From the IMG/VR virus record IMGVR_UViG_3300017991_000002, positions 1-64,000 of that record: a DNA stretch of 64,000 nt, one strand, 5' to 3'. The notes beneath the pieces are model-generated. The model was not told the origin of the DNA. It saw only the letters and a program-made list of their open reading frames with translations, and ran no database searches. Of the stretch, positions 1 through 48,125 are shown one piece after another. Both the position numbers and the translations under genes were made by a program. Each line of letters opens with the position of its first letter. Position 1 is the first letter of the stretch.

Positions 1-505
1 AATATGCTTTTCGACCGGGGTTAAATGAAATTTCATATCCACCGTAAAACTCCTTCAGTGCCAATCGAACATACCCGAGCTTTTCAAGGTCTCCCCTGGG
101 GACGGCAATGAACCTCGTACCGGTCAGCCGTTCATTTAACTTCAGGGATCGATTAATATCGTGGTAAGTTCTCATTGATTTTCTGATTTTAACGGCCGTT
201 ACCCGATCAACATTAAGATACCGACGGGCCATCTCCTTGTCACGAGACTCAGGAGGATACGTCGGCCAGTATGAGGATCTGGCAGTTGCCTGGATTCTAC
301 TGACTGGCTCCTTGATAGAGGTCAATGACTTTTTCAACAAGGAGATACCATAAATTGCCCCGGCCAATGCACTCAAGCTTCCGAAGGTTTTCAGAACCTT
401 CCGGACCACCCTCTTGGTCTTCGTGTCGGCCTTCTTCTCCTGCTTGATCCTCTGGGCTAGATCAGAATAATCTGTATATGGTATCGAGATCGATGACTCA
501 ATCAT
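1..505 (-). CDS. Partial virion-cluster protein (runs off left edge)
   Basis: Hand translation from ATG at 505: MIESSISIPYTDYSDLAQRIKQEKK..., open to position 1; Gly/Ala hydrophobic stretch followed by basic residues like its neighbours. Confidence 0.7.
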   Translation of the reverse strand, partial: MIESSISIPYTDYSDLAQRIKQEKKADTKTKRVVRKVLKTFGSLSALAGAIYGISLLKKSLTSIKEPVSRIQATARSSYWPTYPPESRDKEMARRYLNVDRVTAVKIRKSMRTYHDINRSLKLNERLTGTRFIAVPRGDLEKLGYVRLALKEFYGGYEISFNPGRKAY

Positions 506-521
506 TTGTCCTGGTATTACT

Positions 522-1166
522 TTAAGCATTTAAACCCTCTGGTAAATAAATCATCACTTTCTTTGTCATTTTCGACCGACTCAGATCCGAAGGAGTCACA
601 AACTTCTTGGGAGATTTGGTCGTAAAGTTAATATCCTTGTATGCAATGGAGATAAGATTAGAGCAAATAACAGAAAAACTATTGGGCCTTTTCTTCTCCT
701 TGAACTTTTTGTGTAATAGTTTTCTTTTTGCTTTGTGTGCCACCGTCTTGACCGTACCCCAAAGAGTTACCCGCATCCCTTTCTTGTGAGCATGCTTAAT
801 AAATTTAATGGCTTCCTTCTTCTGCTGTGGGGTAGCTCTTGGTCGTAACAACAGTACCGGACTCTTCTTAATAAAACGATTTACCGATACGATAAAGGTC
901 CCTGTTGGAATAGCGTTGAATACCTTACCCCCTCCCAAATAAAATGCCGAATGAGGAAAATACTCCTGCTGTGGTAATGATAGTGTATATGACCACCTGC
1001 CTGGCCCTTTAAAACCTCGATACTTGGCCATAGTTCTCGTATTTATTATATCCCCCGGTTTCATGGCACTAATAAACTCCTCCGGATCGTGGGTTATGGG
1101 CACACGTTCAGGTATTCTGGGCTTTAAGGCAAATTCACTCAATACTGCTTCTTGTATACTGGCCAT
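522..1166 (-). CDS. Permuted papain-like NlpC/P60 (YiiX/YebB-like) hydrolase
   Basis: PGDII, HSAFYLGGGKV (His first), CSNLISIAY (Cys later) and VTPSDL motifs in permuted order. Confidence 0.75.
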   Translation of the reverse strand: MASIQEAVLSEFALKPRIPERVPITHDPEEFISAMKPGDIINTRTMAKYRGFKGPGRWSYTLSLPQQEYFPHSAFYLGGGKVFNAIPTGTFIVSVNRFIKKSPVLLLRPRATPQQKKEAIKFIKHAHKKGMRVTLWGTVKTVAHKAKRKLLHKKFKEKKRPNSFSVICSNLISIAYKDINFTTKSPKKFVTPSDLSRSKMTKKVMIYLPEGLNA

Positions 1167-1167
1167 G

Positions 1168-2019
1168 TTATCCCTTCATTCTGTCCTGAAGCATTGAAAT
1201 GCGATGACCAAGTCCTTCCCATTTTCTTACTGACTTGTCCGCATCATGAAACACCTTATCTGCTGTTTTAAACTCTGCTTGCCACTTCTTTTCACTTTCC
1301 GTATCTCCCTTTCTATGGGACATCTTAATGAAGTCCTGGGCAACCTTCTTTGCCCTTTCCGCTTCCATCCTAATACCGTTAGCCTCCATTGCATGATCTA
1401 CCACAGAGTCCATCATATTTTTTACACGACTCATAGTCTCGGGCTCGTCTCGGGCTGCGGCCGCACGCCTACGGTACTGACCAATCTCGGCCGCAGTAAG
1501 GTAAAGATCCATTATAAATTTATATGCCTTCCATATTTCACTTAAGGCTAAAGCCAAAAAAACAGCAGGTATAATCTTCCTCCCGAATTCATACCGGTTA
1601 ATATCCCTGAGACGCTTAGGATCGACAAATCTTCCTTGGTGGTCAACATAAACATAGGGCTTTCCCCGAGATTTCCATTTTTTATACACAAAGGAGGCTG
1701 CCCCTACCGAAGCTCCGATAAGAGACCCCATCAGATACCCTAACAGTCCAAACGCAAGAGCACCCACCCCAACCATCCCAACGCCGCTTCTGACTTTGGA
1801 AAGATTAACTATGGCCCGGCGGCCTGTGAGCATACGCTCTTTCGGGACAGTGCTTCTCGGTCTTTCTTGTCCTATAGCTGTAAGAGTTCCTAGGGCTGCA
1901 CCGACTCCTGCACCGATCTTCAGTCCTTTTACACTTCCCTTACCCAGGCCAACCGCAATTGATCTTGTTAGTGTCGGAACCACCACTTTCCCTTTACGGA
2001 TTTTGGGGTAATGGTACAC
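1168..2019 (-). CDS. Basic protein with Gly/Ala-rich hydrophobic segments, putative virion/ejection protein
   Basis: 283 aa; several Gly-zipper-like segments followed by Lys/Arg clusters. Confidence 0.55.
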   Translation of the reverse strand: MYHYPKIRKGKVVVPTLTRSIAVGLGKGSVKGLKIGAGVGAALGTLTAIGQERPRSTVPKERMLTGRRAIVNLSKVRSGVGMVGVGALAFGLLGYLMGSLIGASVGAASFVYKKWKSRGKPYVYVDHQGRFVDPKRLRDINRYEFGRKIIPAVFLALALSEIWKAYKFIMDLYLTAAEIGQYRRRAAAARDEPETMSRVKNMMDSVVDHAMEANGIRMEAERAKKVAQDFIKMSHRKGDTESEKKWQAEFKTADKVFHDADKSVRKWEGLGHRISMLQDRMKG

Positions 2020-2047
2020 AAGCCGTAGCTTCTCTTCCCGTGCCTTC

Positions 2048-2662
2048 TTATGCTTGGGCTCTTAACTTTATGGCCTTAACAGAAGGAGCAATCCCGGTCG
2101 CTGATGGTCGCATTAAGGCACCCATCACCAACGAACCGTATCGATCCCTCCAATCCTTACCAAACCATCCCTTGTAACGATTGGCGGCAATCGGTCTCTC
2201 TATCCTACCCTTCAACTTACCCGAAAAGGCAGCAGTATATGCAGCCTCGGAAACTCTCCCCAATGTATAGTCAACAAAATTACTGGACATTTTATCCAAT
2301 AATGCAGGCTTCGAGAGCAGGGACATAAGCCCAGGACTTGATAACCCCGAATCTTTAAAGTCCTTCAACTCATCTTTATACATAGAAACGGCAAGGTTAT
2401 CCGGGACAAGGCCACTTATATTTTTCTTCACCACCTTGATCCTTGAGGATCTTGCAAGGGCAGACTTAACGGTTATCTTCCTCGGCCCAACCAACTTACG
2501 GGCCTCTTCAACAGCAATGTCCCACGTCCTCTTCAGGATCTGGTCAATAAGATCGATCATCTGGGCACGGGTCTTGGCGGCTCTATGTTTTCGATACCAA
2601 CCCCTTATCAGCTCGAATTCCGTTCTTTTTTTAGACTTCTTTGCTGCTTCCTGCAGGTTCAT
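2048..2662 (-). CDS. Hypothetical virion-cluster protein
   Basis: 204 aa; N-terminus MNLQE-AA; start overlaps the upstream stop. Confidence 0.6.
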   Translation of the reverse strand: MNLQEAAKKSKKRTEFELIRGWYRKHRAAKTRAQMIDLIDQILKRTWDIAVEEARKLVGPRKITVKSALARSSRIKVVKKNISGLVPDNLAVSMYKDELKDFKDSGLSSPGLMSLLSKPALLDKMSSNFVDYTLGRVSEAAYTAAFSGKLKGRIERPIAANRYKGWFGKDWRDRYGSLVMGALMRPSATGIAPSVKAIKLRAQA

Positions 2663-3276
2663 TACTTATGCTTCTCCCAATACTCTTCGCCTTCCTTCTC
2701 CATCTTATCGAGCCGGGTGTAATAGTCCGGCAGTTCCATCAAATGTGCCTTGGCGATCGCCTTTGAGATAGTGGGATTATCGTGGTGTTCCTTCTTCTCC
2801 ACCTCAATCCCTCGCTTAAGTTCCCGGGCATCAAACTTCCTATCTGGAACATCAGCATGTTTCAAGTCCGAGGCCCGGACGATAGGATCAACATCTTCTT
2901 CCTCTTCGTCCTCTTCCATGCTACCGGCCTTTACAAGCTTGTGGGCAATTTTGTAGACGAACTCCTCGGCCGTCTCCGGATCAATACCATTCTCCACCGC
3001 AAAATTATGGAACTCTTTATCCGATGGCTCAGGATGTGAAGCAATATACTTAATAATCGCTTTTGCCTGATCAGGGGAGACATCCTCATACATGGGAGTA
3101 CGGAAGCCGCCGGGAACCTTATTAAACCTCAGGGCGGAAGCCCGTAGACTTCGAGCAGACCCACCATCGGTTCCTCGCTCCGGGGTTGCCCACATTCCTT
3201 TCCGTTTTTTATATTCCTGCGGGGACTCGAAGCGTCCTGCACCGGACTCGAGTACCGCTTCTCTGATTGAAGCCAT
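2662..3276 (-). CDS. DUF5661-like domain protein
   Basis: C-terminal ELKRGIEVEKKEH...AIAKAHLMELPDYYTRL; N-terminus MASIRE-AVLE. Confidence 0.7.
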   Translation of the reverse strand: MASIREAVLESGAGRFESPQEYKKRKGMWATPERGTDGGSARSLRASALRFNKVPGGFRTPMYEDVSPDQAKAIIKYIASHPEPSDKEFHNFAVENGIDPETAEEFVYKIAHKLVKAGSMEEDEEEEDVDPIVRASDLKHADVPDRKFDARELKRGIEVEKKEHHDNPTISKAIAKAHLMELPDYYTRLDKMEKEGEEYWEKHK

Positions 3277-3381
3277 GTGTTACTCCTTTTTCGTGATGAC
3301 ACACCAATACCGACTCCTTCGTTGGAGCTCGGCATGTGTTCCAACTCGTCCCGACCGCATCGATGACATAATGTCACCCCC

Positions 3382-4284
3382 TTAGAAGCTAAAGGGTTCT
3401 AATGCAGTTGGGGCACTTATTTTTGGTCCACTCGGATACTTTCCGACATTCCTTCCATGGCGAGATGGGGAAACGTTCGAACTGGCGGGCTTCCCGATCG
3501 GCATCTTATCGATCCCGAGGTCCTGAATTGCCATCTGGGCCAGCAACTTGGCGGCACGATCGATAGCAATGCCGGACTTGGCCATCTCAACAGCATGGGT
3601 AATCTTCCGGATCTTCATCGGGTTTCGGATGATTGCCTTGATTGTGTTTCTGACTTCCGCCGGGCTGATGTACATTCCTCGCCGTATTGACTCCTTCAAG
3701 ACAGTGGCAGTAGCGGCTTGCAGCATCTCCCTCGAGTGCCTGGCCTTGAACCACTTAACACCTGCAGCAACCATGGTAGCACCCAGGACCGCAACGAGCG
3801 GTTTCAGCGTCTTGGTAATGTCTGCGATCGGTATCATCCCCCTCTTGAACTTCGAGTCGACTGTTTTAGCAGCAGTAGCCCCTGTTTTGAAATACTCCTC
3901 CGGTCCCATTACCCTGGCCTCTTGTAAACCACCGTTCCTGCGAATGATCCTCCATTGCTCGAGAATAACAGCCCGAGGGTCAGCACTGGAAAGTCTCACC
4001 TTCACCGGTTCATCATCTGCTTCCGCCAGGTAGAGTCCAAAGAGGGAGGCAACGCCTTCTTCATCGATCACTACACAATCCGACAGTAATTGGTCACCGT
4101 CGCCTTCATAAAAGTCCAATAGAAAGAAAAACTCATCCTCGGACAGCCCGCCGTCTACCCCCTCAGCCTCCTCAATGGGGGTCTTGAAGGGGAAGACAAG
4201 GCCGGCACGTTCACCGTGGACGAGATACTCCCCAATGGATCCGATCATGGCGTCGGAAAGATCTACTGGAGTTCTGATCATCAC
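3382..4284 (-). CDS. Putative virion protein, acidic N-half and basic C-half
   Basis: 300 aa; charge switches at GGLQE-AR. Confidence 0.6.
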   Translation of the reverse strand: MMIRTPVDLSDAMIGSIGEYLVHGERAGLVFPFKTPIEEAEGVDGGLSEDEFFFLLDFYEGDGDQLLSDCVVIDEEGVASLFGLYLAEADDEPVKVRLSSADPRAVILEQWRIIRRNGGLQEARVMGPEEYFKTGATAAKTVDSKFKRGMIPIADITKTLKPLVAVLGATMVAAGVKWFKARHSREMLQAATATVLKESIRRGMYISPAEVRNTIKAIIRNPMKIRKITHAVEMAKSGIAIDRAAKLLAQMAIQDLGIDKMPIGKPASSNVSPSRHGRNVGKYPSGPKISAPTALEPFSF

Positions 4285-4352
4285 GTACTCCTTGGTAATT
4301 TTATATAGTCCCGCGGCGGGCCCGGCAATCGGGCCCTGATTTCATTCCGCGT

Positions 4353-5996
4353 TTACTTCCGGGCTTCTTTCTCTGCTTTCTTCTTCGCGCGTCGTTTCTT
4401 TAAAGCTTTGACTCCTTTGTATGCACCTAATCCGGCAGCAAGACCAGCAGCGGCCGTTCCTATGCGAGCTGTTCTTTGCATTTTGGCATAGTCCTTGTCC
4501 GGTATACCAGCCATATAGGACTTTGTCGCAAAACTACCTGCTTTCCTTGCCTGCTTCCGAGTAAGGCCGGATTTCCTAGCCTTCATTTCTGCATCCACAC
4601 CGGTTTTCACGGCTGCCTTATAATGCCCCTTCTGCCTCTTGTACTCTTGCCCGGCTTTAAATGCCTTCTCTCGCGCCTTTTGGCCTATTTTGAAAGCAAG
4701 GTCTTTTTCCTCGAGGTCGTCTTCTTCAACGTCCCCGATACCGAGAATAGCATCTGCCACTTCAGAAGCATCAAGCTCACCAGCAGCAATCCCTTCAATA
4801 ATTCCTTCAGCGGTGCCGAGTATCTCAGCATCCTCCTCAGCGGCCTCAACCATCTCCATGTAATCATAGAGCTGGGTGGCCTCTTCTTCGGTCAACCCAT
4901 CAACGAAAACGTCGACCTGGCTATCCGGTACCTGCATCAGGTTTTCAAACAATTCGAAGATGAGGTCTTCGCTCATGTTTTCTTCACTTTTACCAGACTC
5001 CCTAGCACCAAGCTCCGCACCCTTCTGAAAACCCTTCTGAAATTGTTTCTGAAGAGACCAAGGTCCTTTCTTACCTTTTCTTGTATAAAGGGACTTAGAG
5101 ACACCAGGTTCCTTGGATAGAAGTTTCTTGTATCTCGGGATGGTGTCTTGTTTTGCCTGGTACTTAGCGCCAACACCTACCAATTTCTTGGCCAGCTTCT
5201 TGGGGGCCCCGACTTCCCTACCCATCCTCGTCAAGGTTTGGTGCATCTTCTCCCCAGATTTCTGACCCCGAAATCCCGTAATACCCATTCTCTGTTTCAT
5301 TTTCCTGGCACCCATACCACGAGCCTTCTTATAAAGCTCCATCTTTCGTTCCTTGGAGACCTCTTCAATTGCGCCTTCGCAGAACGGACACACCAGGAAG
5401 TCACCATCGTCATCTTCAAGCAGGAGACCGTCGACGTCGACAAAGGACTCATTGCAGTGTGGACATTCAATAACATCTTCCTGCTGGGATTTTTTGGCTT
5501 TGCGTCGTTTGTACAGCTTCCGAGCCAGTGCAGCCGCGGCAATACCGGCACCAATACCGGCAGCAGTTTTTGGATGGGCTTTGATGGCCCCGCCAGCCTT
5601 ACCTGCAGTCTCTCCGGTTTTACCGAGAAACTCAGCAGCTTTCCGTTTCCGTTCATAACTCCGCATGCGTTTAACATCGGGGTCTACATACTCGTCCAAC
5701 TCGAGTGTACTTTCACAATAAGGACACTCGTAGTACTGTCCCTCATCGTCTTCATAGAGCTGGACATCTTCTTCGTTAAATTCTTGTTCACAAAATGGAC
5801 ATTCGATAATCATTGATCGTTCCTCCATATTTAAAGTAAAAGGTTTCCCTTCTTGTTCTCCTTCTTGTGCGGGTTCGAGTCCTCGTTTCTTTGCAGTAGC
5901 ATAGAAAACTTGTTTTCCTTTCTTGTTTCCATACTGCCGGATCATACTCCGAAGGACATCCTCCCCTCTTCCTTTGTAGTATTTTGAGATTGGCAT
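4353..5996 (-). CDS. Modular virion polyprotein with two acidic C4 Zn-ribbons and basic segments
   Basis: CPFC..CPYC and CPHC..CPFC modules alternate with Lys/Arg-rich segments. Confidence 0.65.
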   Translation of the reverse strand: MPISKYYKGRGEDVLRSMIRQYGNKKGKQVFYATAKKRGLEPAQEGEQEGKPFTLNMEERSMIIECPFCEQEFNEEDVQLYEDDEGQYYECPYCESTLELDEYVDPDVKRMRSYERKRKAAEFLGKTGETAGKAGGAIKAHPKTAAGIGAGIAAAALARKLYKRRKAKKSQQEDVIECPHCNESFVDVDGLLLEDDDGDFLVCPFCEGAIEEVSKERKMELYKKARGMGARKMKQRMGITGFRGQKSGEKMHQTLTRMGREVGAPKKLAKKLVGVGAKYQAKQDTIPRYKKLLSKEPGVSKSLYTRKGKKGPWSLQKQFQKGFQKGAELGARESGKSEENMSEDLIFELFENLMQVPDSQVDVFVDGLTEEEATQLYDYMEMVEAAEEDAEILGTAEGIIEGIAAGELDASEVADAILGIGDVEEDDLEEKDLAFKIGQKAREKAFKAGQEYKRQKGHYKAAVKTGVDAEMKARKSGLTRKQARKAGSFATKSYMAGIPDKDYAKMQRTARIGTAAAGLAAGLGAYKGVKALKKRRAKKKAEKEARK

Positions 5997-6002
5997 TGTT
6001 CC

Positions 6003-6839
6003 TTACCCTGTCCTTTCAATCGATTGTATCTTTGAATCGGGAATCTTGTCAACCGATGGGTATGATTTACTCCGTGCACGATGGGTTGTCACAAAGTATC
6101 CCGTTCCATCTTTCTTGACTGAAACTCCCGAGAATCGTTTCCGTTGTTCCGGCATAAGATTAACATAATAATTACCGTGCCGGTCAGTATTTCCCTTTTC
6201 CTGGAGAGAGATAATGCTCTCTTTTAGCTTTCTCTTTCTCAGCTTCCCCATCCTACCCCGATATTGGACATATCTATAACCCCAAGCCGGAATACTAAGC
6301 AACGCACCCGCGGCTGCAGCAGTTTTTGGGTCTACATGGTAGTGCCCATAAGGCATTCCATGCTTTCGCAATTGCTTCTGCACCTGAGCCGTTGATAATC
6401 CAGCTGCTGCTCCACCGGTCATATAACCTACCAGGGAAGGAGGTCCTTCACCTATTTTCCTGCCTCGTAGTTTCCTGGCCACTGATGAGCCTACATCATA
6501 GCCAAGTCCTGCAGCGAGAGAACCAGTTCCAGCAATTGCACCCGCAGAAGCACCGTGCTTTGCCATATGTTTTGCCATTACTTTGGGATCAGTATTTCCT
6601 CCATACATGTATGAGGGGGCCGATCCGATTGCAGCAGCAGAAAGACCATGCTCACCGGCACGTTTTACTCTATACTGTAACTGTCGACCCGCCCTTCGGA
6701 GAATTGATCGTTCATATAAAAGATCTTCTTTTAACTTCTTCTTGAAAGATGGATCCCTCTTGACCGCAGCCGCGACTCGTTCAAATCGTACTAAGCTAGG
6801 ACTATAATCTATATCCATTCTATTACTCCTCATGTCCAC
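6003..6839 (-). CDS. Putative virion protein with conserved phage C-terminal domain
   Basis: Ends GVSVKKDGTGYFVTTHRARSKSYPSVDKIPDSKIQSIERTG; Gly/Ala-rich middle. Confidence 0.6.
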   Translation of the reverse strand: MDMRSNRMDIDYSPSLVRFERVAAAVKRDPSFKKKLKEDLLYERSILRRAGRQLQYRVKRAGEHGLSAAAIGSAPSYMYGGNTDPKVMAKHMAKHGASAGAIAGTGSLAAGLGYDVGSSVARKLRGRKIGEGPPSLVGYMTGGAAAGLSTAQVQKQLRKHGMPYGHYHVDPKTAAAAGALLSIPAWGYRYVQYRGRMGKLRKRKLKESIISLQEKGNTDRHGNYYVNLMPEQRKRFSGVSVKKDGTGYFVTTHRARSKSYPSVDKIPDSKIQSIERTG

Positions 6840-7321
6840 GTTGTTCCGGAGCCATAGTTCTCTTCAGGTTCCCGAGCGTTCTTTCCAACCTCTGCACGAG
6901 GACCCATTACCCTATACTTAGGCTTCCTCATCCTTTCATATAATAAAGCAGCCTCTCGAATGCTCATTCCTTCATTTTTTGTTTTCTCTGCTTTTACAAC
7001 AATCTTCTTGGCCCAAGAATAACCGGGATTTCCTCCCCAAAGGAGCCAGGACACATAAGACTTACTCGGTGGATCAGTCGTATGCTTGTCCTTGAAGGCA
7101 CTGTGTCGGTCAAAGAAGGCCTTCATCCGTTTGACCGTTTCCAGGCTCAGGGCATCGCCGTTCTTAATATTGACTGCACGTTGAACGCCTGAGCCAATCC
7201 CTTCGGCTGCAGCTTGCTTCACTGACAGTCCACCCTTGCCGCCGGACTTCTTTCGAAGTTCCAGGCCGCGGGCCGCTGCTTTCCTGGCTGCTGGTGGTGG
7301 AATGTATCCCATATTACTCAC
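6830..7321 (-). CDS. Phage head-associated domain protein (SWLLWGG motif)
   Basis: AARGLELR...LSLETVKRMKAFFDRH...VSWLLWGGNPGYSWAKKIV, a domain I recognise from phage head morphogenesis/protease-linked proteins. Confidence 0.65.
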   Translation of the reverse strand: MSNMGYIPPPAARKAAARGLELRKKSGGKGGLSVKQAAAEGIGSGVQRAVNIKNGDALSLETVKRMKAFFDRHSAFKDKHTTDPPSKSYVSWLLWGGNPGYSWAKKIVVKAEKTKNEGMSIREAALLYERMRKPKYRVMGPRAEVGKNAREPEENYGSGTTWT

Positions 7322-9464
7322 CTTTTGGCTTCTTGGTTCCCCGCCAATCCCATTTCGTTTTCAGCTCAATAATATCAAAAGGAGAAAACCCGAGGTTCAG
7401 CAAACGAGCATAGCCAAAGGACAATGCATCCTCCGGAGAAAGTCCGTGCTTTGACAACAGGTCAACGATCCTGGAACGATTAACCCCACCGGCATTGGCC
7501 GATTCAAACATTGCTTCATCAAGATTTACGGATGCCTCCGCAACCAGCATATCAATATACTCATTAATGTCTTCAATATGGCTCAGATCCTCTTCCACTT
7601 TTCCAATGGAACGAAGGGCAACATCCTTGGACACATTGAAGTTTTCCATCAATTCCCGGACAGCAATCGCAAGGATTTCCCGGTCAGCGTCTTCTTCGAT
7701 CGGTTCACCCTTAATGACTGCCTCTACTCGGGGATACAGGGTCGATACCAGCTCGTAGTGAGCCTCCTTGACCTCCCGTTCCTTCAGGCCCTCCAACATG
7801 GAGAAATCAACGCCATTGAGCACCTCGTCGATCGCTTTGGTCAGTCCGCCAGGCTTAAGATCATAATCACGCTTTAACCGTTCCGCCAATTGTCGACCAA
7901 TGACCCGTTTATGGACCGAGTCAGCGACCGGTCCTGTCTTCCGGAAGAACTTGGCCTTCTTGCGATAATCTACACCGGAACCCCGGGCCTGGGGATTGTA
8001 CCGCTGCATCATCACTTCGCCGGAACGGGCAGCACCTGCAGCGGGCCTATATTCTGACAAGTCAGCTTCCTTCACGTACTGATTACCCTTGCCCATTGAC
8101 GGCTTCGGGGTCATCTCAATGCTTCTTCGATCCGCAGCAAGCGTCCTACGCTCGTCGCCAGTTGTTGCCGTTGAGCCGGAAGCTCCAGTCACCGCAATCC
8201 TGGTTCCTTGATTGTCAATCGGGGCATTACGATCTTTTAACATGGCCGGATCAATTCGACGAACACCGTGGGCTTCTGATATCTTGGCTTTTTTGGCTTT
8301 GCGCTTGGCCAAAAGTTCTTTAGCCTTCTTATAAGCTACAGCACCGGTAATACCGGCCCCCGCTAAAGCGGCTCCTTTTCCAATACGGAAATCTTTTCCT
8401 TTAGTTGGAGCATCCTTTGTTACAGTCACAGTTGCTGAGGGTAAACCTATTCCCTTAGCTGATACAGGCTTAGGAGGCCTACGCAGACCTTTGATCGCTT
8501 GCCCGGCCTTAAACCCGATCTCTCCAGCCTTCAACCTGGTCTTCAGGAGAGGTGAATCTGGACTATACGTCTTCTCGTCCAAATCGTCCTTCTCCATAAC
8601 CTTAACCCTCTTCTTGATCTTGGGCTTTCCCTTCGGCAATCCTGCACGAGGATCCGGTGCATTGTGTGGAAACACGAAGCCGACGCCGGGTTGTTCACTC
8701 AGGCTTTTGGAGACGATCATTTTTCGCTCGGGGCTGAGCTCTTCCAACCCTCCCTTCTCGCCCATATACCCGGGTTCTGCTTTCCAGAAGCGTCGTTTCT
8801 TGGCGCTGGTTCGATCACCGGCTGGCGGAAGTCCCTTACCATGGAAGTCAACCTCGTGGGTCATCGTCGTGTCCTTACCGGAAAGCATTCCGGTGGGGGC
8901 TTCGTCGACATCATCTTCTCGAACATCTTTTCCAGCTTTTGCTTGCTGTATGTTCTTGACGAACTTGGCATGGAGGCGTTTCTCCTTCTCCACTCCAAAG
9001 TCTCTTTTACCGATCCGCTCCGCATGTCTCACGAATTTCGAGCCGATCTCTGACTCCATAAGGGTCCCTTTCTTACCGGCCTCTTCCTTGTCATCCTTCT
9101 CGTCCTTCTGCTTATTATAAACTGCCAATGCTCTCCTATAATCGGACCGAAAGTCCTCCTCAAGAGACTGGCCGCATACTTCTTTGATTTGTTGCTTCAA
9201 TAATTCTCGACTGGTCATGTTTTCACCTACCGTCTTCCCACCTTTCAGTCTACCAGGGGCAACTCCAGTTCCCTGGATACCGTCCGGGGTATGTTTTGTA
9301 TGTTCACGGGCATTCAATGACCCGACGTTTGCTTTTCCGACCCTTCCAAGCGCTCCAGCCTCCGCCACGGTCGCTGTCTTTATCTTCTTCAGCTTCGGAC
9401 GTCTGAACTCCTTACTGGCAGAAACCCAAGCCTTTCCGGAAATGCCGCGGAGTGATTCCTTCAT
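7314..9464 (-). CDS. Large basic/acidic virion polyprotein
   Basis: 716 aa low-complexity mosaic with many L/I/V-x-E sites. Confidence 0.65.
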   Translation of the reverse strand: MKESLRGISGKAWVSASKEFRRPKLKKIKTATVAEAGALGRVGKANVGSLNAREHTKHTPDGIQGTGVAPGRLKGGKTVGENMTSRELLKQQIKEVCGQSLEEDFRSDYRRALAVYNKQKDEKDDKEEAGKKGTLMESEIGSKFVRHAERIGKRDFGVEKEKRLHAKFVKNIQQAKAGKDVREDDVDEAPTGMLSGKDTTMTHEVDFHGKGLPPAGDRTSAKKRRFWKAEPGYMGEKGGLEELSPERKMIVSKSLSEQPGVGFVFPHNAPDPRAGLPKGKPKIKKRVKVMEKDDLDEKTYSPDSPLLKTRLKAGEIGFKAGQAIKGLRRPPKPVSAKGIGLPSATVTVTKDAPTKGKDFRIGKGAALAGAGITGAVAYKKAKELLAKRKAKKAKISEAHGVRRIDPAMLKDRNAPIDNQGTRIAVTGASGSTATTGDERRTLAADRRSIEMTPKPSMGKGNQYVKEADLSEYRPAAGAARSGEVMMQRYNPQARGSGVDYRKKAKFFRKTGPVADSVHKRVIGRQLAERLKRDYDLKPGGLTKAIDEVLNGVDFSMLEGLKEREVKEAHYELVSTLYPRVEAVIKGEPIEEDADREILAIAVRELMENFNVSKDVALRSIGKVEEDLSHIEDINEYIDMLVAEASVNLDEAMFESANAGGVNRSRIVDLLSKHGLSPEDALSFGYARLLNLGFSPFDIIELKTKWDWRGTKKPKGE

Positions 9465-9466
9465 GG

Positions 9467-11095
9467 TTACGACTCCTCCTGGCCGGCCAGCTCTTTCTTC
9501 TTTCTCTTCAGCAGCCGTTTCAATTTTACCTTGACGGGAATCCCCCTTGGCCCTCTTCCCTTACCAAACGCCTCTCCTCGGCCTTCTCCCTTGGAACGGA
9601 TATTTTTGCCGGGAGTCTTACAGGTAATCTCATCCCCCGAGACGACAAAGTCAGCACCGGATGGGACACCGATCGGTCCTTCTCCCTTCCCGAAGGCTTC
9701 CCCTCGACCTTTTCCCTTGGATCTGATCTTCTCACCGGGGGTCTTGCACTTGGCTTCTTCGATATCCTCATACCGCTGTCGCCTGGCCATGATCATGCGC
9801 TGAATGATTTGACTTTTATAATTCTCTCGTTCCCGGGGGGTGAATTCGCGTTTACTCCTCTTCTCCATAGACGAAACCATGTTGTTCGCCGTCTTCTCGT
9901 ACCGATCGCGTAATACTGCGGGGATCTGGTAGCCAAGGTCAGAGATCGCTACCCCTGGAGGACTCTGGGGCATCCCGTAGTCAATATTTCGCCCGTCGTC
10001 TCCATACTCATGAATCTGTCCGGATCCATACTTCGAAAGGTAATCCGCCATCTGGTAACCAACACCTTCCGGATTCTGTGTCAGGTCAGCAACCCTTGGA
10101 CGCTTCTGGGCGGAAACCTTTTTTCGGCGATGCATCTGGTAAGAGTGCATCACGGGTGTCGTCACGAAGCCTTCAGTATTGCTCATCCATTCTTTTTCTT
10201 CGTGATTGATATCATCAGCCACGAGGGATTTATTCTTGTGCGGCTTCTTCATGGGTTCATAATGGGTGAGAAGCTTCTTGGACACTTGGATGTTCTCGCG
10301 GTGACCGGCAGGCATAAGGTAACTGGCATGCTGCCCTTTTCGGGGAGATTGCTTCCTGTCTTCAACTTCATTGAGTTCATGTCGGGAATAATCCTGGTCA
10401 GTGGGCTGCGATTTCCCAGCTGCTTCACTGAGGTCGATATCCGACAACCTAGGGTACCCTGGTCCAGGAAGTACCCCTCCCCCTACCGTGAAAGTCTGAC
10501 CCCGGGGGTTGGTAAGTACTACATCATATCCCCTATAAGGTGGCATACCCCTGCATACCATCTCCATAATCCAATGTGATCCATCTGACCCATCAAGATC
10601 GAATGCAGAGACGAGACCATTAATTGGCTCGATATCATAGAAGTACCCACTCGCACCCCCCATAACCTGGGTTACCCCCTCCAACAAGGTGGTACTCTGT
10701 ATACCATGTTTATGGGGTACAGGTACCTGGAAAGTATACCCCCGGGTACCAAGATCTTCGACCGAGTGTAAAACTTTCCGGTGCGAGGACATCTTCCTGA
10801 CGACATCCTCCGCAAGAACTTTTCCTGCTATCTTTGGTGACGCTTCTTTGATCCGATTAATCTTGCTCCTCACTGCATGCTCCCTGAGGGAAGACTGGAT
10901 AACCTGAGCAGCAAGACCATAAGAGACCGACTTCCCCGTAAACTCCTCCAGGATCACCCTAGAGGCGGTATCCGAGAACTCCCCGCAGGCGTTTCCGTCT
11001 GATCCGAAGATACCATGGTGGAGAGTCGCCTCATAAATGAGATCGAAGGCGCTGTCTCGGTCAAAGAACTCGTAACTTCCACTATTGTTTATCAT
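9467..11095 (-). CDS. Putative virion protein with duplicated C-terminal CKTPG..RSKG.GRG repeat
   Basis: 542 aa; RBS AGGGAG upstream of ATG at 11095. Confidence 0.65.
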   Translation of the reverse strand: MINNSGSYEFFDRDSAFDLIYEATLHHGIFGSDGNACGEFSDTASRVILEEFTGKSVSYGLAAQVIQSSLREHAVRSKINRIKEASPKIAGKVLAEDVVRKMSSHRKVLHSVEDLGTRGYTFQVPVPHKHGIQSTTLLEGVTQVMGGASGYFYDIEPINGLVSAFDLDGSDGSHWIMEMVCRGMPPYRGYDVVLTNPRGQTFTVGGGVLPGPGYPRLSDIDLSEAAGKSQPTDQDYSRHELNEVEDRKQSPRKGQHASYLMPAGHRENIQVSKKLLTHYEPMKKPHKNKSLVADDINHEEKEWMSNTEGFVTTPVMHSYQMHRRKKVSAQKRPRVADLTQNPEGVGYQMADYLSKYGSGQIHEYGDDGRNIDYGMPQSPPGVAISDLGYQIPAVLRDRYEKTANNMVSSMEKRSKREFTPRERENYKSQIIQRMIMARRQRYEDIEEAKCKTPGEKIRSKGKGRGEAFGKGEGPIGVPSGADFVVSGDEITCKTPGKNIRSKGEGRGEAFGKGRGPRGIPVKVKLKRLLKRKKKELAGQEES

Positions 11096-11184
11096 CTTAA
11101 ACTCCCTTGAACAATGCTAAACTCCCAACGGGAGCGTCTTTTTACCTAATCTACCCATTTAGGGGCCAAATTGTCATCAATGTC

Positions 11185-11660
11185 CAACAAAGTACCCACC
11201 TCATACCCCCTTTTACGTACCTTGATACGGTACTTGTTAGTATACAAGTTCCAACTTCTTTGTATACTGATAGGGTACTTCCCCTATATCAAGTTACATC
11301 TTCTTGAATATCGCACAAGAATGAAACCACACAGCAGACGATCAATCCTTCCCCAATTCAACATGTCGTACCCTCACATAGGACATACCCCCTATCAGTA
11401 CCCTATAAAGTACCCATACAGATACCCTACTTGTTAGTATACAAGTTCCAACTTCTTGGTATACTGATGGGGTACTTCCCCTATATCAAACACCAACTCG
11501 TCATTTTTTGAGGAAGATCCAGCCAAGATGACTCAAAATTCAACAACATAGTATACAGTATGGGTACTTCCTAGCATACAAGTGCTGACTTCCTGGTATA
11601 CAGATAGGGTACTTGTTGGTATACTGATAGGGTACTTCCCTTATATCAAGTTACATAAAT
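11185..11660. repeat. Iteron-like GGTACTT repeat region with a 62-bp direct repeat
   Basis: 11231-11292 and 11428-11489 match at 60/62; partial third copy at about 11609-11656; six GGTACTT plus inverted AGTACC copies. Confidence 0.85.
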
Positions 11661-11710
11661 AATAAATATCAGCACCATTCGTGTAAAAATTAGGGTTTAT
11701 TTTTCCCTTG

Positions 11711-11734
11711 CAAATACCCCTAAAGGGGTATTTG
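11711..11734. repeat. Perfect palindrome
   Basis: CAAATACCCCT-AA-AGGGGTATTTG (11-bp arms). Confidence 0.8.
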
Positions 11735-11752
11735 GGGAACAGGCGGTTGGAG

Positions 11753-11790
11753 ACAAAAAAAGCCCCCAAGGATTTCTCCCTGGGGGCCTA
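11753..11790 (-). terminator. Rho-independent terminator ending the early region
   Basis: Minus strand GCCCCCAGGG-AGAAA-TCCTTGGGGGC followed by T7. Confidence 0.8.
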
Positions 11791-11848
11791 GACCTTACGT
11801 TGGGTTGAACATGAAACCTACCGTTGGACTTATGCAACAATAGGGGAG

Positions 11849-43161: not shown

Positions 43162-43812
43162 CTATTTAATCCTTAATTTTCTGTAATACCTTTTTCCCTC
43201 AGGCTTCCTGCCCTGTATTTCATACAACATTACAACACACATCCAAGAGGCATCAAAAAACTTTCCAGGAATCATACTGTGAAGATGATTCTCGCTTATC
43301 CCTGACAGGTTAAAGAGATGATTACTAAACTCCCTAGCCCTCATTACTGTCAATTCGGAGACTTTTATGGTTATTCTGCAAAACGAGGGATTCATGCTGC
43401 TGGATGCCCTCCACACAGAAGATTGGGTTTGCCATTTTGGCACAGGACTAAGGCCCACTTTCCCGACCCATTCAGTGGATGTTCTCTCCTTCCCTATTCG
43501 ATACCTAGGATATCTATACTCAATAACCTGCTCTCCCCTCGTCACCACATAAGGTCTCCATTGCTCCTTGCACCTCAAGACATCCCCAACTACAGGGAAG
43601 AGGCCCCTCCCCCAATACTCCCCATTTATCTTTAAAAAGTTAAATTTCCCATTACTACTTAACGAAAACTCATAAGGAATACTTTCACCGGAGGCATTAG
43701 GAACAACAGGCCGGATCAAAGCACCCGTCGTGGAGAACCCCTTACTCTCTAAAAGCTCCACAGCCTTTATGATCTCCCACTCCCTCAAATTTACATACCC
43801 TAAAGCCAACAT
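43162..43812 (-). CDS. ASCH-like/morphogenetic-type protein, tagged
   Basis: GDVLRCKEQW..WRASSSMN..RITIKV; ends YRKLRIK. Confidence 0.55.
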   Translation of the reverse strand: MLALGYVNLREWEIIKAVELLESKGFSTTGALIRPVVPNASGESIPYEFSLSSNGKFNFLKINGEYWGRGLFPVVGDVLRCKEQWRPYVVTRGEQVIEYRYPRYRIGKERTSTEWVGKVGLSPVPKWQTQSSVWRASSSMNPSFCRITIKVSELTVMRAREFSNHLFNLSGISENHLHSMIPGKFFDASWMCVVMLYEIQGRKPEGKRYYRKLRIK

Positions 43813-44249
43813 TACTTCTCCTTAAGTTCATCTCTTATCTTCATAAGGATCTTTCCAAGTTCATTTCTTCCCTCCCCAGTTCTCTCATCGACACCCCAAA
43901 AAACATCGTGCCACCAATTACCTTCTACCAGTTCCCTGTCACCAGTGTTAAGGAGCTTATACTTCATAAAATTCCTACTGAACTTTTGTCGGACCAGGTC
44001 CTCCATAATCCCGACCTTAACATCTTCCCAATCCTCCCTTAAAGTAACCCTTCGCCCTATTCTCTTGGCCGAGCCGGGATCCTGCGATGACCGTATCTTC
44101 GCTCTTTCTTTCTCACTTAACGTCTTTGCCGCCTGGAACGCATGCTCCACAGTTCTATATACCTTCCCCTCGAACACAACATCCGTCCGATAGTAATTGG
44201 ACAGATATCTAAACTTCCCCACAAACATCCTTATAGGATCAGTCTTCAT
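43812..44249 (-). CDS. NADAR (YbiA-like) family protein
   Basis: LSNYY..VEHAFQAAK..AKRIGR..REDWE..KF..LLNTGDRELVEG..DVFWG..GRNELGKILM. Confidence 0.9.
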   Translation of the reverse strand: MKTDPIRMFVGKFRYLSNYYRTDVVFEGKVYRTVEHAFQAAKTLSEKERAKIRSSQDPGSAKRIGRRVTLREDWEDVKVGIMEDLVRQKFSRNFMKYKLLNTGDRELVEGNWWHDVFWGVDERTGEGRNELGKILMKIRDELKEK

Positions 44250-46252: not shown

Positions 46253-46825
46253 TCAAATGTTTATAATTCCCCTTCCTTTCAACTCATAAAAGATAGTTTT
46301 AAGGGCAAAAACATCAGAGTGGGCTGTATGAGCATCTTCCATGTCCTCATTCAAGGCACACTTGAACAATTCTCCAAGCTTCGGCCACTTATAGCCTCTA
46401 CCTCTTCCCCGCTTGGGAAGCTGACAAAACTCAGTAAGCTCACGCATCGTACAGTATTTCGGTATCGAATCAAAGGACTTAATAGCCTTCCCCAGGCCAA
46501 CCTTATAAAGCTCCTGCCTGATTATTTCTGCATCGAATTCGATATTATGCGCAATAACATAATCCGCTATCATACAATGCATTAAAAAAGTCTTCAGGGC
46601 CACGATAGTAGGAACCCCTACCCTCTCTGCATAAGCAGTAGTTATTCCGTGAATGTTCGTGGCAGATCCCGGGATCGTCCACCCAACCGGCTTGATAATC
46701 ATACTCATTGAGGCCATCTCCTCAGCCTCTTCATTGGCCAATAAAGAAGCCAACTGTACCATCTCGTGGTGCTCGTGCTCTAGAAGTCCACAGCTTTCTA
46801 TATCAAAAAACAGATACGTCTTCAC
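46253..46825 (-). CDS. DEDDh 3'-5' exonuclease (DnaQ-like)
   Basis: FFDIESCGL, AHNIEFD, AHTAHSDV. Confidence 0.88.
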   Translation of the reverse strand: MKTYLFFDIESCGLLEHEHHEMVQLASLLANEEAEEMASMSMIIKPVGWTIPGSATNIHGITTAYAERVGVPTIVALKTFLMHCMIADYVIAHNIEFDAEIIRQELYKVGLGKAIKSFDSIPKYCTMRELTEFCQLPKRGRGRGYKWPKLGELFKCALNEDMEDAHTAHSDVFALKTIFYELKGRGIINI

Positions 46826-47612: not shown

Positions 47613-48125
47613 CTATTGATGTGTCAGCACCTGAGCACCTATGCCATATTTTCCACTTTTCTTTCTATATTCATGTCCCCTCTCTCTCGATGCGGCAACC
47701 TTCATCGACTTAAGAAGTCCAGGCCGTTTCACTCCCTTGGTCCGTTTAATTGCCTTCTGCATGATCGGCTTCATTTCCTTTTTATATGCTGTCTTGAATT
47801 CACGCTTCAGTAGCTGTTTCCTCCTTTTGTGGGCTTCGGCAGCGGGCCAAACTGGCCTCGGATCATTTCTTCCCATCTTTTTACCTTGTAATTCAGTCCG
47901 CCAGTAATCTATATGGCGTCTGGCGTCTTCTTTTGCCCGCTTTCGAACCTCTGGATCCTTCATGCGTTCCCGCACCTTTTTACGTGCCCAAGCAAGTGCC
48001 TCTTTCTTACTCTTAAACTTGGCCTCTAATAGTTCATCAATCACGTCAGATGGAGGGTACCCATCGAGGACTGCTTCAATCATCTCTTGCGTTCTTGATA
48101 GTTCAAGTTTTTTGTCCATTCCCAT
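47613..48125 (-). CDS. Protein with acidic leader and very basic cargo
   Basis: IEAVLDGYPPSDVIDELLE-AKFKSK... Confidence 0.65.
   Translation of the reverse strand: MGMDKKLELSRTQEMIEAVLDGYPPSDVIDELLEAKFKSKKEALAWARKKVRERMKDPEVRKRAKEDARRHIDYWRTELQGKKMGRNDPRPVWPAAEAHKRRKQLLKREFKTAYKKEMKPIMQKAIKRTKGVKRPGLLKSMKVAASRERGHEYRKKSGKYGIGAQVLTHQ

What the first reader, a model, noticed from the sequence alone, without database searches (positions are those of the whole stretch)
1..11095. Cluster of virion polyproteins with many I/L-x-E sites resembling T4 prohead-protease cleavage sites
Seen: four proteins begin, or restart a segment, with the same short leader (MASIQE-AV, MASIRE-AV, MNLQE-AA, internal MSIRE-AA). 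Internal hydrophobic-x-E sites (GLQE-A, KISE-A, DLSE-A, DIEE-A, DLEE-K, DLDE-K, SLQE-K, LLYE-R) repeatedly mark a switch from acidic spacer to basic segment. Known: T4 gp21 cleaves after Glu in I/L-x-E contexts, and T4 internal proteins carry a cleavable capsid-targeting leader. Inference: these are head-packaged precursors cut into many basic peptides delivered with the DNA.
Basis: partly seen in the sequence, partly recalled or inferred. Interest (0 to 1): 0.68.

Follow-up and report, generated by a model that had tools for sequence, protein, structure and literature searches.

The report
Protease-cut head proteins of a giant phage
A block of eleven orphan genes in an uncultured 205-kb T4-like phage carries twice the expected number of the exact motif (Ile/Leu-x-Glu) cut by the T4-type head protease that this phage also encodes. 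They are therefore most likely head-internal precursor proteins trimmed into basic pieces, a known principle in a new and unusually modular form.

Summary
All quoted leaders and sites exist on the minus strand. [IL]-x-E occurs 69 times against 35 expected in the eleven proteins (z 5.8; 0 of 500 shuffles). The excess is limited to I/L at P3, E at P1 and that exact spacing.

Every other gene block of the genome shows 0.8-1.2x, except one protein: the phage's own gp21-like protease-scaffold fusion (29 vs 13).

The same statistic picks out the known gp21 substrates in phage T4 (54 vs 30).

The protease keeps the catalytic His and Ser. The MASI[Q/R]EAVL leader is conserved as peptide, not as DNA. 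Four homologous 'basic + Gly/Ala stretch + polybasic' units and eight acidic zinc-ribbon modules are bounded by such sites.

The local 'acid-to-basic junction' claim is only partly supported: local tests were not significant, one global charge-partition test was.

There is no virion or cleavage evidence. The proteins are near-orphans, and site conservation in the single homolog is no better than for Glu in general.

Best reading (about 0.6): these are prohead-incorporated internal proteins processed by the T4-type protease. Delivery with the DNA is inferred. This is a new variant of a known kind.

The parts
9467..11095 (-). First gene of the cluster, 542 aa. It has 12 [IL]xE sites vs 4.8 expected. 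The C-terminal part after DIEE|A (residue 447) is a +14 basic tail with a tandem CKTPG..IRSKG.GRGEAFGKG repeat (9470-9754).
7314..9464 (-). 716-aa precursor-like protein with 16 sites vs 7.8 expected. It holds a basic Gly/Ala unit (residues 298-397 = 8274-8573) bracketed by LDE|K and ISE|A. The C-terminal 250 aa form a conserved acidic helical domain.
6830..7321 (-). 163-aa protein. Residues 6-115 match phrog_2859. The same domain sits in head-assembly modules of unrelated phages. The tail carries internal MSIRE|AA and LLYE|R (6953-6967).
6003..6839 (-). 278-aa basic protein (+30) with 5 sites vs 1.1 expected. Unit 44-131 (6447-6710) is bracketed by LYE|R and IGE|G. The C-terminal 45 aa match phrog_3666.
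4353..5996 (-). 547-aa multi-module precursor. It has two acidic Zn-ribbon modules (5715-5801, 5379-5465), each followed by an [IL]xE and a basic stretch. It also has two basic Gly/Ala + polybasic units (5481-5690, 4356-4706) and a long acidic spacer ending DLEE|K.
3382..4284 (-). 300-aa protein. The acidic N-terminal 109 aa hold 6 sites. A basic C-terminal half follows GLQE|A and is paralogous to the 394-aa protein at record 202251-203435.
2662..3276 (-). 204-aa protein with leader MASIRE|AV (3259-3276) and a C-terminal DUF5661 domain (44 bits, cut-off 27).
2048..2662 (-). 204-aa basic protein (+23) with leader MNLQE|AA (2648-2662). No family found.
1168..2019 (-). 283-aa basic protein with two Gly/Ala-rich hydrophobic stretches (35-51, 78-112). 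It has only one [IL]xE.
522..1166 (-). 214-aa basic protein with leader MASIQE|AV (1149-1166). It is a candidate permuted NlpC/P60 (Peptidase_C92-like) hydrolase.
1..529 (-). Start of a 416-aa gene that continues across the record's 123-bp terminal overlap into record positions about 203997-205244. It has 8 sites.
11096..11800 (-). Non-coding region upstream of the cluster. It holds a strong terminator-like hairpin (11760-11789) and then five copies of GTACCCTATCAGTATAC-like elements (11262-11640). The cluster therefore starts its own transcription unit.
47613..48125 (-). The same module recurs four times in the related contig L014.
49742..50296 (-). Second, diverged gp21-like (S77) ORF of 184 aa. 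It keeps the residues that align with T4 His85 and Ser140 and has a polybasic tail.

Best explanation
The cluster encodes head-internal (core or ejection-type) protein precursors of a T4-like jumbo phage.

They are made from their own transcription unit at the head of the long minus-strand virion-gene block. They are built into the prohead around the scaffold. They are then cut after Glu in Ile/Leu-x-Glu by the phage's gp21-type serine protease, which is the N-terminal domain of the 529-aa protease-scaffold fusion at record 172416-174005.

Cleavage removes 5-6-residue leaders (MASIQE, MASIRE, MNLQE). It also chops acidic Zn-ribbon and helical pro-segments into small acidic peptides. What is left:
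- long basic products, namely four related 'basic + Gly/Ala stretch + polybasic' units;
- polybasic tails;
- an NlpC/P60-like hydrolase;
- a DUF5661 protein.

Shown here: the motif statistics, the protease homology and catalytic residues, peptide-level conservation of the leader, and the module boundaries.

Inferred: incorporation into heads, actual cleavage, loss of the acidic pieces, retention of the basic pieces with the DNA, and their entry into the host.
For: (1) [IL]xE is 69 vs 35 in the cluster (z 5.8). It is specific for I/L, for E and for the spacing.

(2) The only comparably enriched protein in the genome is the protease-scaffold fusion (29 vs 13-14.5). The next four most enriched proteins are cluster proteins.

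(3) Positive control in T4. Known gp21 substrates show 54 vs 30.2 (z 4.4). Twenty-three other T4 proteins show 90 vs 77.9. T4 leaders are MELITE|L (Alt), MEGLIE|A (gp67) and MAKINE|LLRE|S (gp24). T4 gp68 is acidic, then has an [IL]xE, then is polybasic. The I/LxE specificity of gp21 is stated in PMC12991175.

(4) The protease matches Pfam S77 at 50.7 bits. It is 37-45% identical to gp21 of about 2,500 T4-like phages. H74 and S128 align with T4 H85 and S140.

(5) The phiKZ-type S/A/G-x-E motif is not enriched (58 vs 71). The signal therefore matches this phage's protease type.

(6) The MCP pro-region ends with PLYE|TTTTT, the only such site between the conserved delta-domain helix and the PNLIA motif.

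(7) The leader is conserved as peptide with different codons, in proteins that are otherwise unrelated. SPN3US ejection proteins gp53/gp54 show the same pattern (PMC5694885).

(8) Four homologous basic units are bounded by sites at 7 of 8 ends or by the protein's end. A Gly/Ala stretch followed by a polybasic tract occurs 4 times in the cluster and 0 times in the other 59,975 aa.

(9) Eight of 8 acidic Zn-ribbon modules, in this phage and two relatives, are followed within 13 aa by a site (about 7.5e-5).

(10) The sites partition charge better than random Glu (0/2000).

(11) The 163-aa protein's domain lies in head modules of other phages, between minor head protein and scaffold/MCP, or fused in front of a capsid polyprotein after the portal.

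(12) The cluster begins after a terminator and leads into the virion block.
Against: - There is no proteomic, structural or expression evidence.
- The proteins are near-orphans. For the 716-aa protein there is one homolog among 1.84 billion representatives; for the 214-aa protein a word search finds none. Selection on the sites therefore cannot be tested properly.
- In the one alignment, 3 of 13 sites are exactly conserved, no better than Glu overall at 13 of 39.
- The closest homolog of the MASIRE protein lacks that leader.
- Only 3 of 11 proteins have the short leader. N-terminal [IL]xE is common in the genome.
- Local junction tests were not significant.
- About half of the 69 sites are expected by chance. 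Many lie in what looks like a folded helical domain (716 aa, residues 528-700) where a protease may not reach.
- Genes just downstream (record 200.6-204.6 kb) and the head-proximal block are not enriched as groups.
- No T4-type late promoter was found.
Confidence: 0.6

Rival explanations
1. They are prohead core or scaffold-accessory proteins. The protease degrades them and they are largely lost from the head, as with T4 gp22 and gp67. They are not stored cargo delivered with the DNA.
For: - The strongest twin of the cluster's signal is the scaffold domain itself.
- Acidic, site-dense segments resemble T4 gp22 and gp67.
- Paralogs of the Zn-ribbon module lie right beside the protease gene (174265-175266).
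Against: - Most of the mass (3,195 of 3,867 aa) would survive as long, strongly basic fragments (+272). Such fragments are unlikely to leave a DNA-filled head.
- At least one product looks like an enzyme (NlpC/P60-like).
Confidence: 0.2
2. The [IL]xE excess is a by-product of sequence style (amphipathic acidic helices, coiled coils, low complexity). The proteins are not protease substrates, and the shared leader serves translation or another role.
For: - In the scaffold, neighbouring spacings are also somewhat raised (gap 0 z 2.5, gap 4 z 1.7), showing that heptad effects exist.
- Site conservation in the homolog is no better than for Glu.
- The complex prediction gave no answer, which is not evidence either way.
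Against: - In the cluster only one of 14 spacing/orientation combinations is raised, and only for I/L with E. A helical style would raise i+3 and i+4 and would include V/M/F and Asp.
- No other block of the genome shows the excess.
- The same test recovers true substrates in T4.
- The leader differs at synonymous positions, so it is not a DNA or RNA signal.
Confidence: 0.12
3. They are membrane-acting infection proteins made in the cell (superinfection exclusion, lysis control, envelope remodelling), not virion components. The Gly/Ala-rich hydrophobic stretches with positive flanks act as membrane anchors.
For: - Gly/Ala-rich uncharged stretches followed by Lys/Arg runs recur.
- Two long hydrophobic stretches occur in the 283-aa protein.
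- An NlpC/P60-like enzyme could serve lysis.
Against: - Most stretches are only 12-19 residues, short for a membrane span.
- This reading does not explain the protease-type motif excess, the leaders, or the head-module context of the 163-aa domain.
- Sizes of 547-716 aa with many modules are unlike holins or exclusion proteins.
Confidence: 0.06

Closest known systems
Phage T4 gp21 substrates: internal proteins IPI-III and Alt with capsid-targeting leaders, and core proteins gp67/gp68/gp22
   Same: - Homologous protease with the same catalytic residues.
- The same I/L-x-E motif and the same statistical signature in substrates.
- 5-10-residue N-terminal leaders that end in the motif.
- gp68-like order of acidic part, then site, then polybasic tail.
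(PMC9026906; PMC12991175)
   Different: - No sequence homology to any T4 substrate.
- Far more coding mass: 11 or more genes, 3.9 kaa.
- Several precursors hold multiple units, with sites between modules rather than only one N-terminal propeptide.
- The protease is fused to the scaffold.
- Zn-ribbon pro-modules and Gly/Ala + polybasic units are not T4 features.
Inner-body and ejection proteins of phiKZ, 201phi2-1 and SPN3US, processed by the gp175/gp245 protease
   Same: - Many head-internal proteins are processed after Glu.
- Multiple sites occur within pro-regions.
- Paralogs have conserved N-termini but diverged bodies.
- A second, diverged protease paralog is present in the genome.
(PMC5694885, PMC9026906; here)
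   Different: - The motif there is S/A/G-x-E or A-x-E, which is not enriched here.
- Propeptides there are usually over 100 aa.
- This phage's head genes (gp20, gp21, gp23, gp24-like) are T4-type.
- No homologous proteins were found.
Polyvalent proteins of phages (Iyer et al. 2017, PMC5512222) and P1 Dar/DdrB head proteins
   Same: - Late-gene context next to virion genes.
- Multi-module proteins proposed to be packaged, processed and injected.
- The 163-aa protein's domain is found in Vibrio-phage proteins annotated as ParB-N or methyltransferase, in such a context.
   Different: - No catalytic domains of disparate activity and no zincin-like processing peptidase were detected in the large proteins.
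- Processing here would be by the prohead protease.
Adenovirus core proteins (pVII, pX/mu) cut by the viral protease (from general knowledge, not tested here)
   Same: Basic DNA-associated peptides are released inside the capsid by a maturation protease from precursors.
   Different: Unrelated virus, protease and motif. This is an analogy only.

Membership tests
Substrates of a T4 gp21-type (MEROPS/Pfam S77) prohead protease | The genome encodes an S77 protease with catalytic His and Ser. | tested here: met
   PF03420 at 50.7-53.4 bits (cut-off 27), record 172416-174005. H74 and S128 align with T4 H85 and S140.
Substrates of a T4 gp21-type (MEROPS/Pfam S77) prohead protease | Cleavage motif I/L-x-E present and over-represented, as in known substrates. 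| tested here: met
   69 vs 35 (z 5.8), specific to I/L, E and the spacing. T4 substrates show 54 vs 30 under the same test.
Substrates of a T4 gp21-type (MEROPS/Pfam S77) prohead protease | Actual cleavage after Glu, and presence of the mature form in heads. | not testable with these tools
   This needs proteomics or an in vitro assay. The complex prediction gave no answer.
T4 internal proteins with a capsid-targeting sequence (IPI-III, Alt) | Short N-terminal leader ending in the motif and shared among otherwise unrelated proteins. | tested here: met
   MASIQE|AVL, MASIRE|AVL and MNLQE|AA. Codons differ and the protein bodies are unrelated. This applies to only 3 of 11 proteins.
T4 internal proteins with a capsid-targeting sequence (IPI-III, Alt) | Sequence homology to T4 IPs, Alt, gp67 or gp68. 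| tested here: not met
   No Pfam or PHROG family of these was hit. tblastn of the 716- and 278-aa proteins against 50,697 phage records found nothing.
phiKZ-type inner-body/ejection proteins | S/A/G-x-E cleavage motif. | tested here: not met
   [SAG]xE is 58 vs 71 expected.
Polyvalent proteins (Iyer 2017) | Several domains of disparate enzymatic activity in one polypeptide, often with a zincin-like peptidase. | tested here: not met
   Pfam finds only Zn-ribbon-like hits in the 547-aa protein and nothing in the 716- and 542-aa proteins.
Peptidase_C92 / permuted NlpC-P60 (214-aa protein) | Match to the family profile. | tested here: not met
   PF05708 was not detected even at E 10. Pfam scan shows nothing relevant.
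Peptidase_C92 / permuted NlpC-P60 (214-aa protein) | Fold and feature similarity. | tested here: inconclusive
   ESM Atlas features score 0.95 (200 of 256 shared) to NLPC_P60/C92 clusters. Its own model (pTM 0.68) gives TM 0.63-0.81 to C92 clusters. My AF2 single-sequence model was unusable (pLDDT 35).
DUF5661 (PF18905; 204-aa MASIRE protein) | Match above the curated cut-off. | tested here: met
   44.2 bits vs a cut-off of 27, residues 146-195. Forty-four homologs all carry PF18905.

The most novel reading that the evidence does not exclude
A deep-branching T4-like jumbo phage builds a protein 'filling' for its head from polyprotein-like precursors. Acidic Zn-ribbon and helical pro-modules target the precursors to the prohead core and are shredded by the gp21-type protease. 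This releases a family of Gly/Ala-zipper + polybasic (protamine-like) peptides and small enzymes, which stay with the DNA and enter the host. That would be a phage counterpart of adenovirus core-protein maturation, using modules (acidic Zn-ribbon pro-domain, 'EMxxAxLEG..P.D..D.LLE' pro-peptide) not described as capsid-targeting signals before.
Probability: 0.3. Interest if true: 0.7.

Novelty: new variant of a known kind. Interest (0 to 1): 0.5.

Why it matters
If correct, a simple composition-corrected motif statistic can pick out prohead-protease substrates, and so the hidden head-internal or ejected proteome, in uncultured phages whose proteins have no homologs. I calibrated that statistic on T4.

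It would also show that the T4 gp21/leader system has been extended in a distant lineage to multi-unit precursors with new pro-modules and a family of polybasic Gly/Ala peptides. These are candidates for DNA charge neutralisation in a large head, or for early action in the host.

The short leaders and pro-modules could be tried as packaging tags, as the T4 leader has been. The protease-substrate pairs can be tested with synthetic genes, without the phage or its host.

Tried and rejected
- Homolog hunts mostly failed.
  - tblastn of the 716- and 278-aa proteins against cultured phages found nothing.
  - IMG/VR word scans with the 716-aa protein and the portal found nothing.
  - Two metagenome scans returned only the source contig.
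  - Exhaustive HMMER found one partial homolog.
  - The word search for the 214-aa protein found only itself.
- Site conservation against that one homolog was uninformative.
- The DNA of the contig carrying the DUF5661 homolog could not be fetched.
- Structure: the AF2 single-sequence model of the 214-aa protein was unusable (pLDDT 35), so no fold search was run. The Atlas search of the MNLQE protein gave only sub-threshold leads (0.76).
- Complex prediction of the protease domain with the first 45 residues of the 214-aa protein gave no answer (score 0.00). It is not evidence either way.
- The T4 late promoter TATAAATA is not used here: 6 copies, none upstream of genes. Late timing could therefore not be inferred that way.
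- The idea that the Gly/Ala stretches are classical transmembrane helices was rejected for most of them. They are 12-19 residues long, and only three stretches pass a 17-residue hydrophobicity filter.
- The idea that the leader similarity reflects a DNA repeat or translation signal was rejected.
- The phiKZ-type motif was rejected.
- The literature holds nothing on DUF5661.
Full report
**Setting**

The window is the first 64 kb of a 205,367-bp virus record whose ends repeat 123 bp. A 416-aa gene runs across that junction.

All cluster genes are on the minus strand and tightly packed. In order of transcription they are:
- 542 aa (9467-11095)
- 716 aa (7314-9464)
- 163 aa (6830-7321)
- 278 aa (6003-6839)
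- 547 aa (4353-5996)
- 300 aa (3382-4284)
- 204 aa (2662-3276)
- 204 aa (2048-2662)
- 283 aa (1168-2019)
- 214 aa (522-1166)
- the 416-aa wrap gene (529 down to 1, then continuing at the other end of the record)

Upstream lies a 700-bp non-coding stretch with a strong terminator-like hairpin and five copies of a 17-bp element. Downstream the same strand runs on into the virion genes:
- tail sheath at 163411-166422;
- a gp23-type capsid gene in three exons;
- a gp21-type protease fused to a coiled-coil scaffold at 172416-174005.

A gp20-type portal lies on the other strand at 115807-117504. The head genes are thus T4-type, but distant: the portal is about 25% identical to the nearest cultured phages.

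**Checking the observation**

I counted [IL]-x-E against an expectation from each protein's own composition.
- The cluster has 69 against 35 (z 5.8). None of 500 shuffles reached 69.
- The excess is carried only by Ile (28 vs 14.7) and Leu (41 vs 20.3) at P3.
- Val, Met and Phe at P3, and Asp, Gln and Lys at P1, are at expectation.
- Of 14 spacing and orientation combinations of I/L and E, only the cleavage-type one is raised. This rules out mere co-enrichment of I/L and E in the same segments, and ordinary helical periodicity.
- The rest of the proteome stands at 1.11x.

Block by block:

| Block | Ratio observed/expected |
|---|---|
| 12-52 kb | 1.22 |
| Plus-strand block | 1.07 |
| Tail genes | 0.97 |
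| Head-proximal genes | 1.13 |
| Fibre region | 0.82 |
| Cluster | 1.97 |
| Protease-scaffold fusion | 2.21 |

Ranked singly, the protease-scaffold fusion is the most enriched protein in the genome, and the next four are cluster proteins. Ala after the Glu is mildly favoured (13 vs 6.2).

**Positive control in T4**

I applied the same statistic to T4 genes 20 to denA.
- The known gp21 substrates (gp67, 68, 21, 22, 23, 24, Alt) give 54 vs 30.2 (z 4.4).
- The 23 other proteins give 90 vs 77.9 (z 1.4).
- gp22 alone gives 16 vs 5.7.

The T4 sequences also show the two design features seen here.
- Short leaders end in the motif: MELITE|L in Alt, MEGLIE|A in gp67, MAKINE|LLRE|S in gp24.
- gp68 has an acidic front, an [IL]xE and a polybasic tail.

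The I/LxE preference of gp21 and its catalytic H85/S140 are stated in PMC12991175. The leader (capsid-targeting sequence) concept is described in PMC9026906.

**The enzyme**

The 529-aa protein matches Pfam Peptidase_S77 over residues 25-163. It finds gp21 of about 2,500 T4-like phages at 37-45% identity. His74 and Ser128 sit at the positions of T4 H85 and S140.

Its protease domain ends at AVLSE|S, aligned with T4's EITE|S. Behind it lies a 360-residue acidic coiled-coil part dense with sites.

The phiKZ-type motif S/A/G-x-E is not enriched in the cluster (58 vs 71). The signal therefore fits the protease type this phage actually has.

The capsid protein's first exon carries PLYE|TTTTT. This lies between the conserved delta-domain helix (aligned weakly with T4 residues 12-44) and the PNLIA motif, about where T4 gp23 is cut.

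**Leaders**

MASIQEAVL and MASIREAVL head two proteins that show no other similarity. They use different codons (Ser AGT vs TCA, Leu TTG vs CTC, Ala GCC vs GCT), and there is no similarity upstream of the ATG. The peptide is conserved, not the DNA.

MNLQE|AA and the internal MSIRE|AA are looser versions.

The same phenomenon was reported for SPN3US gp53 and gp54: identical 15-residue N-termini on ejection-protein paralogs that are only 34% identical (PMC5694885).

Two caveats apply.
- An [IL]xE within the first 12 residues occurs in about 10% of all ORFs here.
- The closest homolog of the MASIRE protein (P0005, 40% identity) starts differently.

**Modules and their borders**

Four segments share a core. 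Each has a basic region, then a 12-19-residue Gly/Ala-rich uncharged stretch, then A-[RK]-[KE]-L...K-R-[RK]-A-K-K.

| Protein | Residues | Preceded by | Followed by |
|---|---|---|---|
| 716 aa | 298-397 | LDE\|K | ISE\|A |
| 547 aa | 431-547 | LEE\|K | protein end |
| 547 aa | 103-172 | LDE\|Y | VIE (not a match) |
| 278 aa | 44-131 | LYE\|R | IGE\|G |

A Gly/Ala stretch followed by a tract of +4 or more occurs four times in the cluster's 3,867 residues and never in the other 59,975.

A second module is an acidic Zn ribbon (CPxC, about 20 mostly acidic residues with ED[DE]xG, then CPxC). Its occurrences:
- twice in the 547-aa protein;
- once each in three proteins of the head region (179117-179521, 179751-180647, 201004-202182);
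- three times in the only relatives found (contig L014 and protein P0005).

All eight copies are followed within 13 residues by an [IL]xE whose local sequence differs from copy to copy (joint chance about 7.5e-5). Most are then followed by a basic stretch.

A third module, EM[IV]xA[IL]L[ED]G..P.D[VL][IV]D.L[LI]E, heads the very basic 170-aa protein at 47613-48125. It recurs four times in L014, and in four of the five copies it ends in an [IL]xE before a basic run.

In order it has a Zn ribbon, an acidic spacer, NIEE|AW, a run of 20 Lys/Arg, an acidic spacer, DLVE|R and a second polybasic segment.

**The acid-to-basic claim**

Local tests did not support it.
- The charge step across [IL]xE sites is no larger than across other Glu (p 0.19).
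- At strictly defined junctions only 2 of 8 Glu had I/L at P3 (p 0.25). In seven similar proteins elsewhere it was 4 of 8 (p 0.011).

A global test did support it. If every site were cut, the 36 fragments of 30 residues or more carry net +272 and the 44 shorter ones carry -77. Choosing the same number of Glu at random gives +221 +/- 14 and -26 +/- 14, and none of 2,000 trials reached the observed split.

The sites are therefore concentrated so that acidic parts fall into small pieces and basic parts stay long, as in T4's core proteins. A one-to-one rule 'site = junction' is not shown.

**What the proteins are**

Family searches gave little.
- The MASIRE protein ends in DUF5661 (44 bits). This is a widespread small domain of unknown function with no literature.
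- The 214-aa MASIQE protein has no sequence homolog. In the ESM Atlas it resembles NlpC/P60 and permuted papain-like C92 hydrolases, many of them viral, by features (0.95) and by structure (TM 0.63-0.81). The Pfam profile itself does not match and my own fold failed, so this remains a lead.
- The 163-aa protein matches phrog_2859. Its domain occurs in other phages inside head modules. In Vibrio phage 382E49-1 it lies in the gene between the minor head protein and the scaffold/MCP genes. In Synechococcus phage S-CBS3 it lies at the N-terminus of the 836-aa 'major capsid protein' that follows the portal. This is independent, if modest, support for a head location.
- The 716-aa protein has a single partial homolog among 1.84 billion representatives. 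That homolog sits on a 4.9-kb contig whose five genes share the style and a weaker motif excess (26 vs 16.8).

**Limits**

- Nothing here shows that the proteins are in particles or are cut.
- With one homolog, conservation of sites is untestable. Three of 13 aligned sites are exactly kept, against 13 of 39 for Glu in general.
- About half of the 69 sites are what chance would give.
- Several sites lie in the conserved C-terminal helical domain of the 716-aa protein, where access is doubtful.
- The complex prediction of protease with a leader gave no answer.

**Conclusion**

Retention and delivery with the DNA are inferred by analogy with T4 internal proteins and with phiKZ/SPN3US ejection proteins.

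The main rival is that these are core proteins that are degraded and lost (about 0.2). A purely compositional artefact is unlikely (about 0.12).

Relative to what is known, this is the T4 principle in a new form: non-homologous cargo, multi-unit precursors, new pro-modules, and a family of Gly/Ala + polybasic peptides.

Noticed in passing
Outside the window: record 169647-172387, minus strand (L010:530-735, 1261-1514, 2187-2467): The gp23-type major capsid gene is split into three exons in three frames. Rfam finds a group I intron at record 171885-172165 (64 bits, cut-off 50). Two weaker half-matches flank a 340-aa endonuclease-like ORF (170235-171257), pointing to a second group I intron that carries a homing endonuclease.
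   Followed up: partly
window 49742-50296 (-): A second, diverged gp21-like ORF of 184 aa (PF03420 at 18-20 bits, below cut-off). It keeps the residues aligned with T4 His85 and Ser140 and ends in a polybasic tail. SPN3US and its relatives also carry a diverged protease paralog.
   Followed up: partly
window 11262-11640 and 53180-53530 (-): A 17-bp element, GTACCCTATCAGTATAC, partly palindromic. Five copies lie in the 700-bp non-coding region upstream of the cluster, and three looser copies lie in the large non-coding region where gene orientation and GC skew switch (about 52-53.7 kb). These may be operator or iteron-like sites; their function is unknown.
   Followed up: partly
window 1-123 = record 205245-205367: The 123-bp 'direct terminal repeat' lies inside a 416-aa gene. 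It is an assembly overlap of a circular or permuted genome rather than a physical end.
   Followed up: yes
window 9470-9754 (-): The C-terminus of the 542-aa protein holds two tandem copies of a roughly 30-residue Gly/Lys/Arg-rich repeat (CKTPG..IRSKG.GRGEAFGKG.GP.G[IV]P). No family was found for it.
   Followed up: no
window 43812-44249, 46253-46825, 46852-47340 (-): A NADAR domain protein (102 bits), an RNase_T-type exonuclease (36 bits) and a weak CHAP-domain match (21.6 bits, below cut-off) lie in the 12-52 kb block. That block shows a slight [IL]xE excess (1.22x, z 2.6).
   Followed up: no
Outside the window: record 134738-135736 (+): A second gp23-family match (39 bits), probably a gp24-like vertex protein. 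It is encoded on the opposite strand, far from the capsid gene.
   Followed up: no
Outside the window: record 174265-182435 (-), upstream of the protease gene: A second group of small proteins has the same design as the cluster: acidic Zn ribbons, Gly/Ala or hydrophobic stretches, polybasic tails, and N-termini such as MMNARELINIVLTE| and MDIKKVVDNILFE|. As a group they are not enriched for the motif (1.13x).
   Followed up: partly
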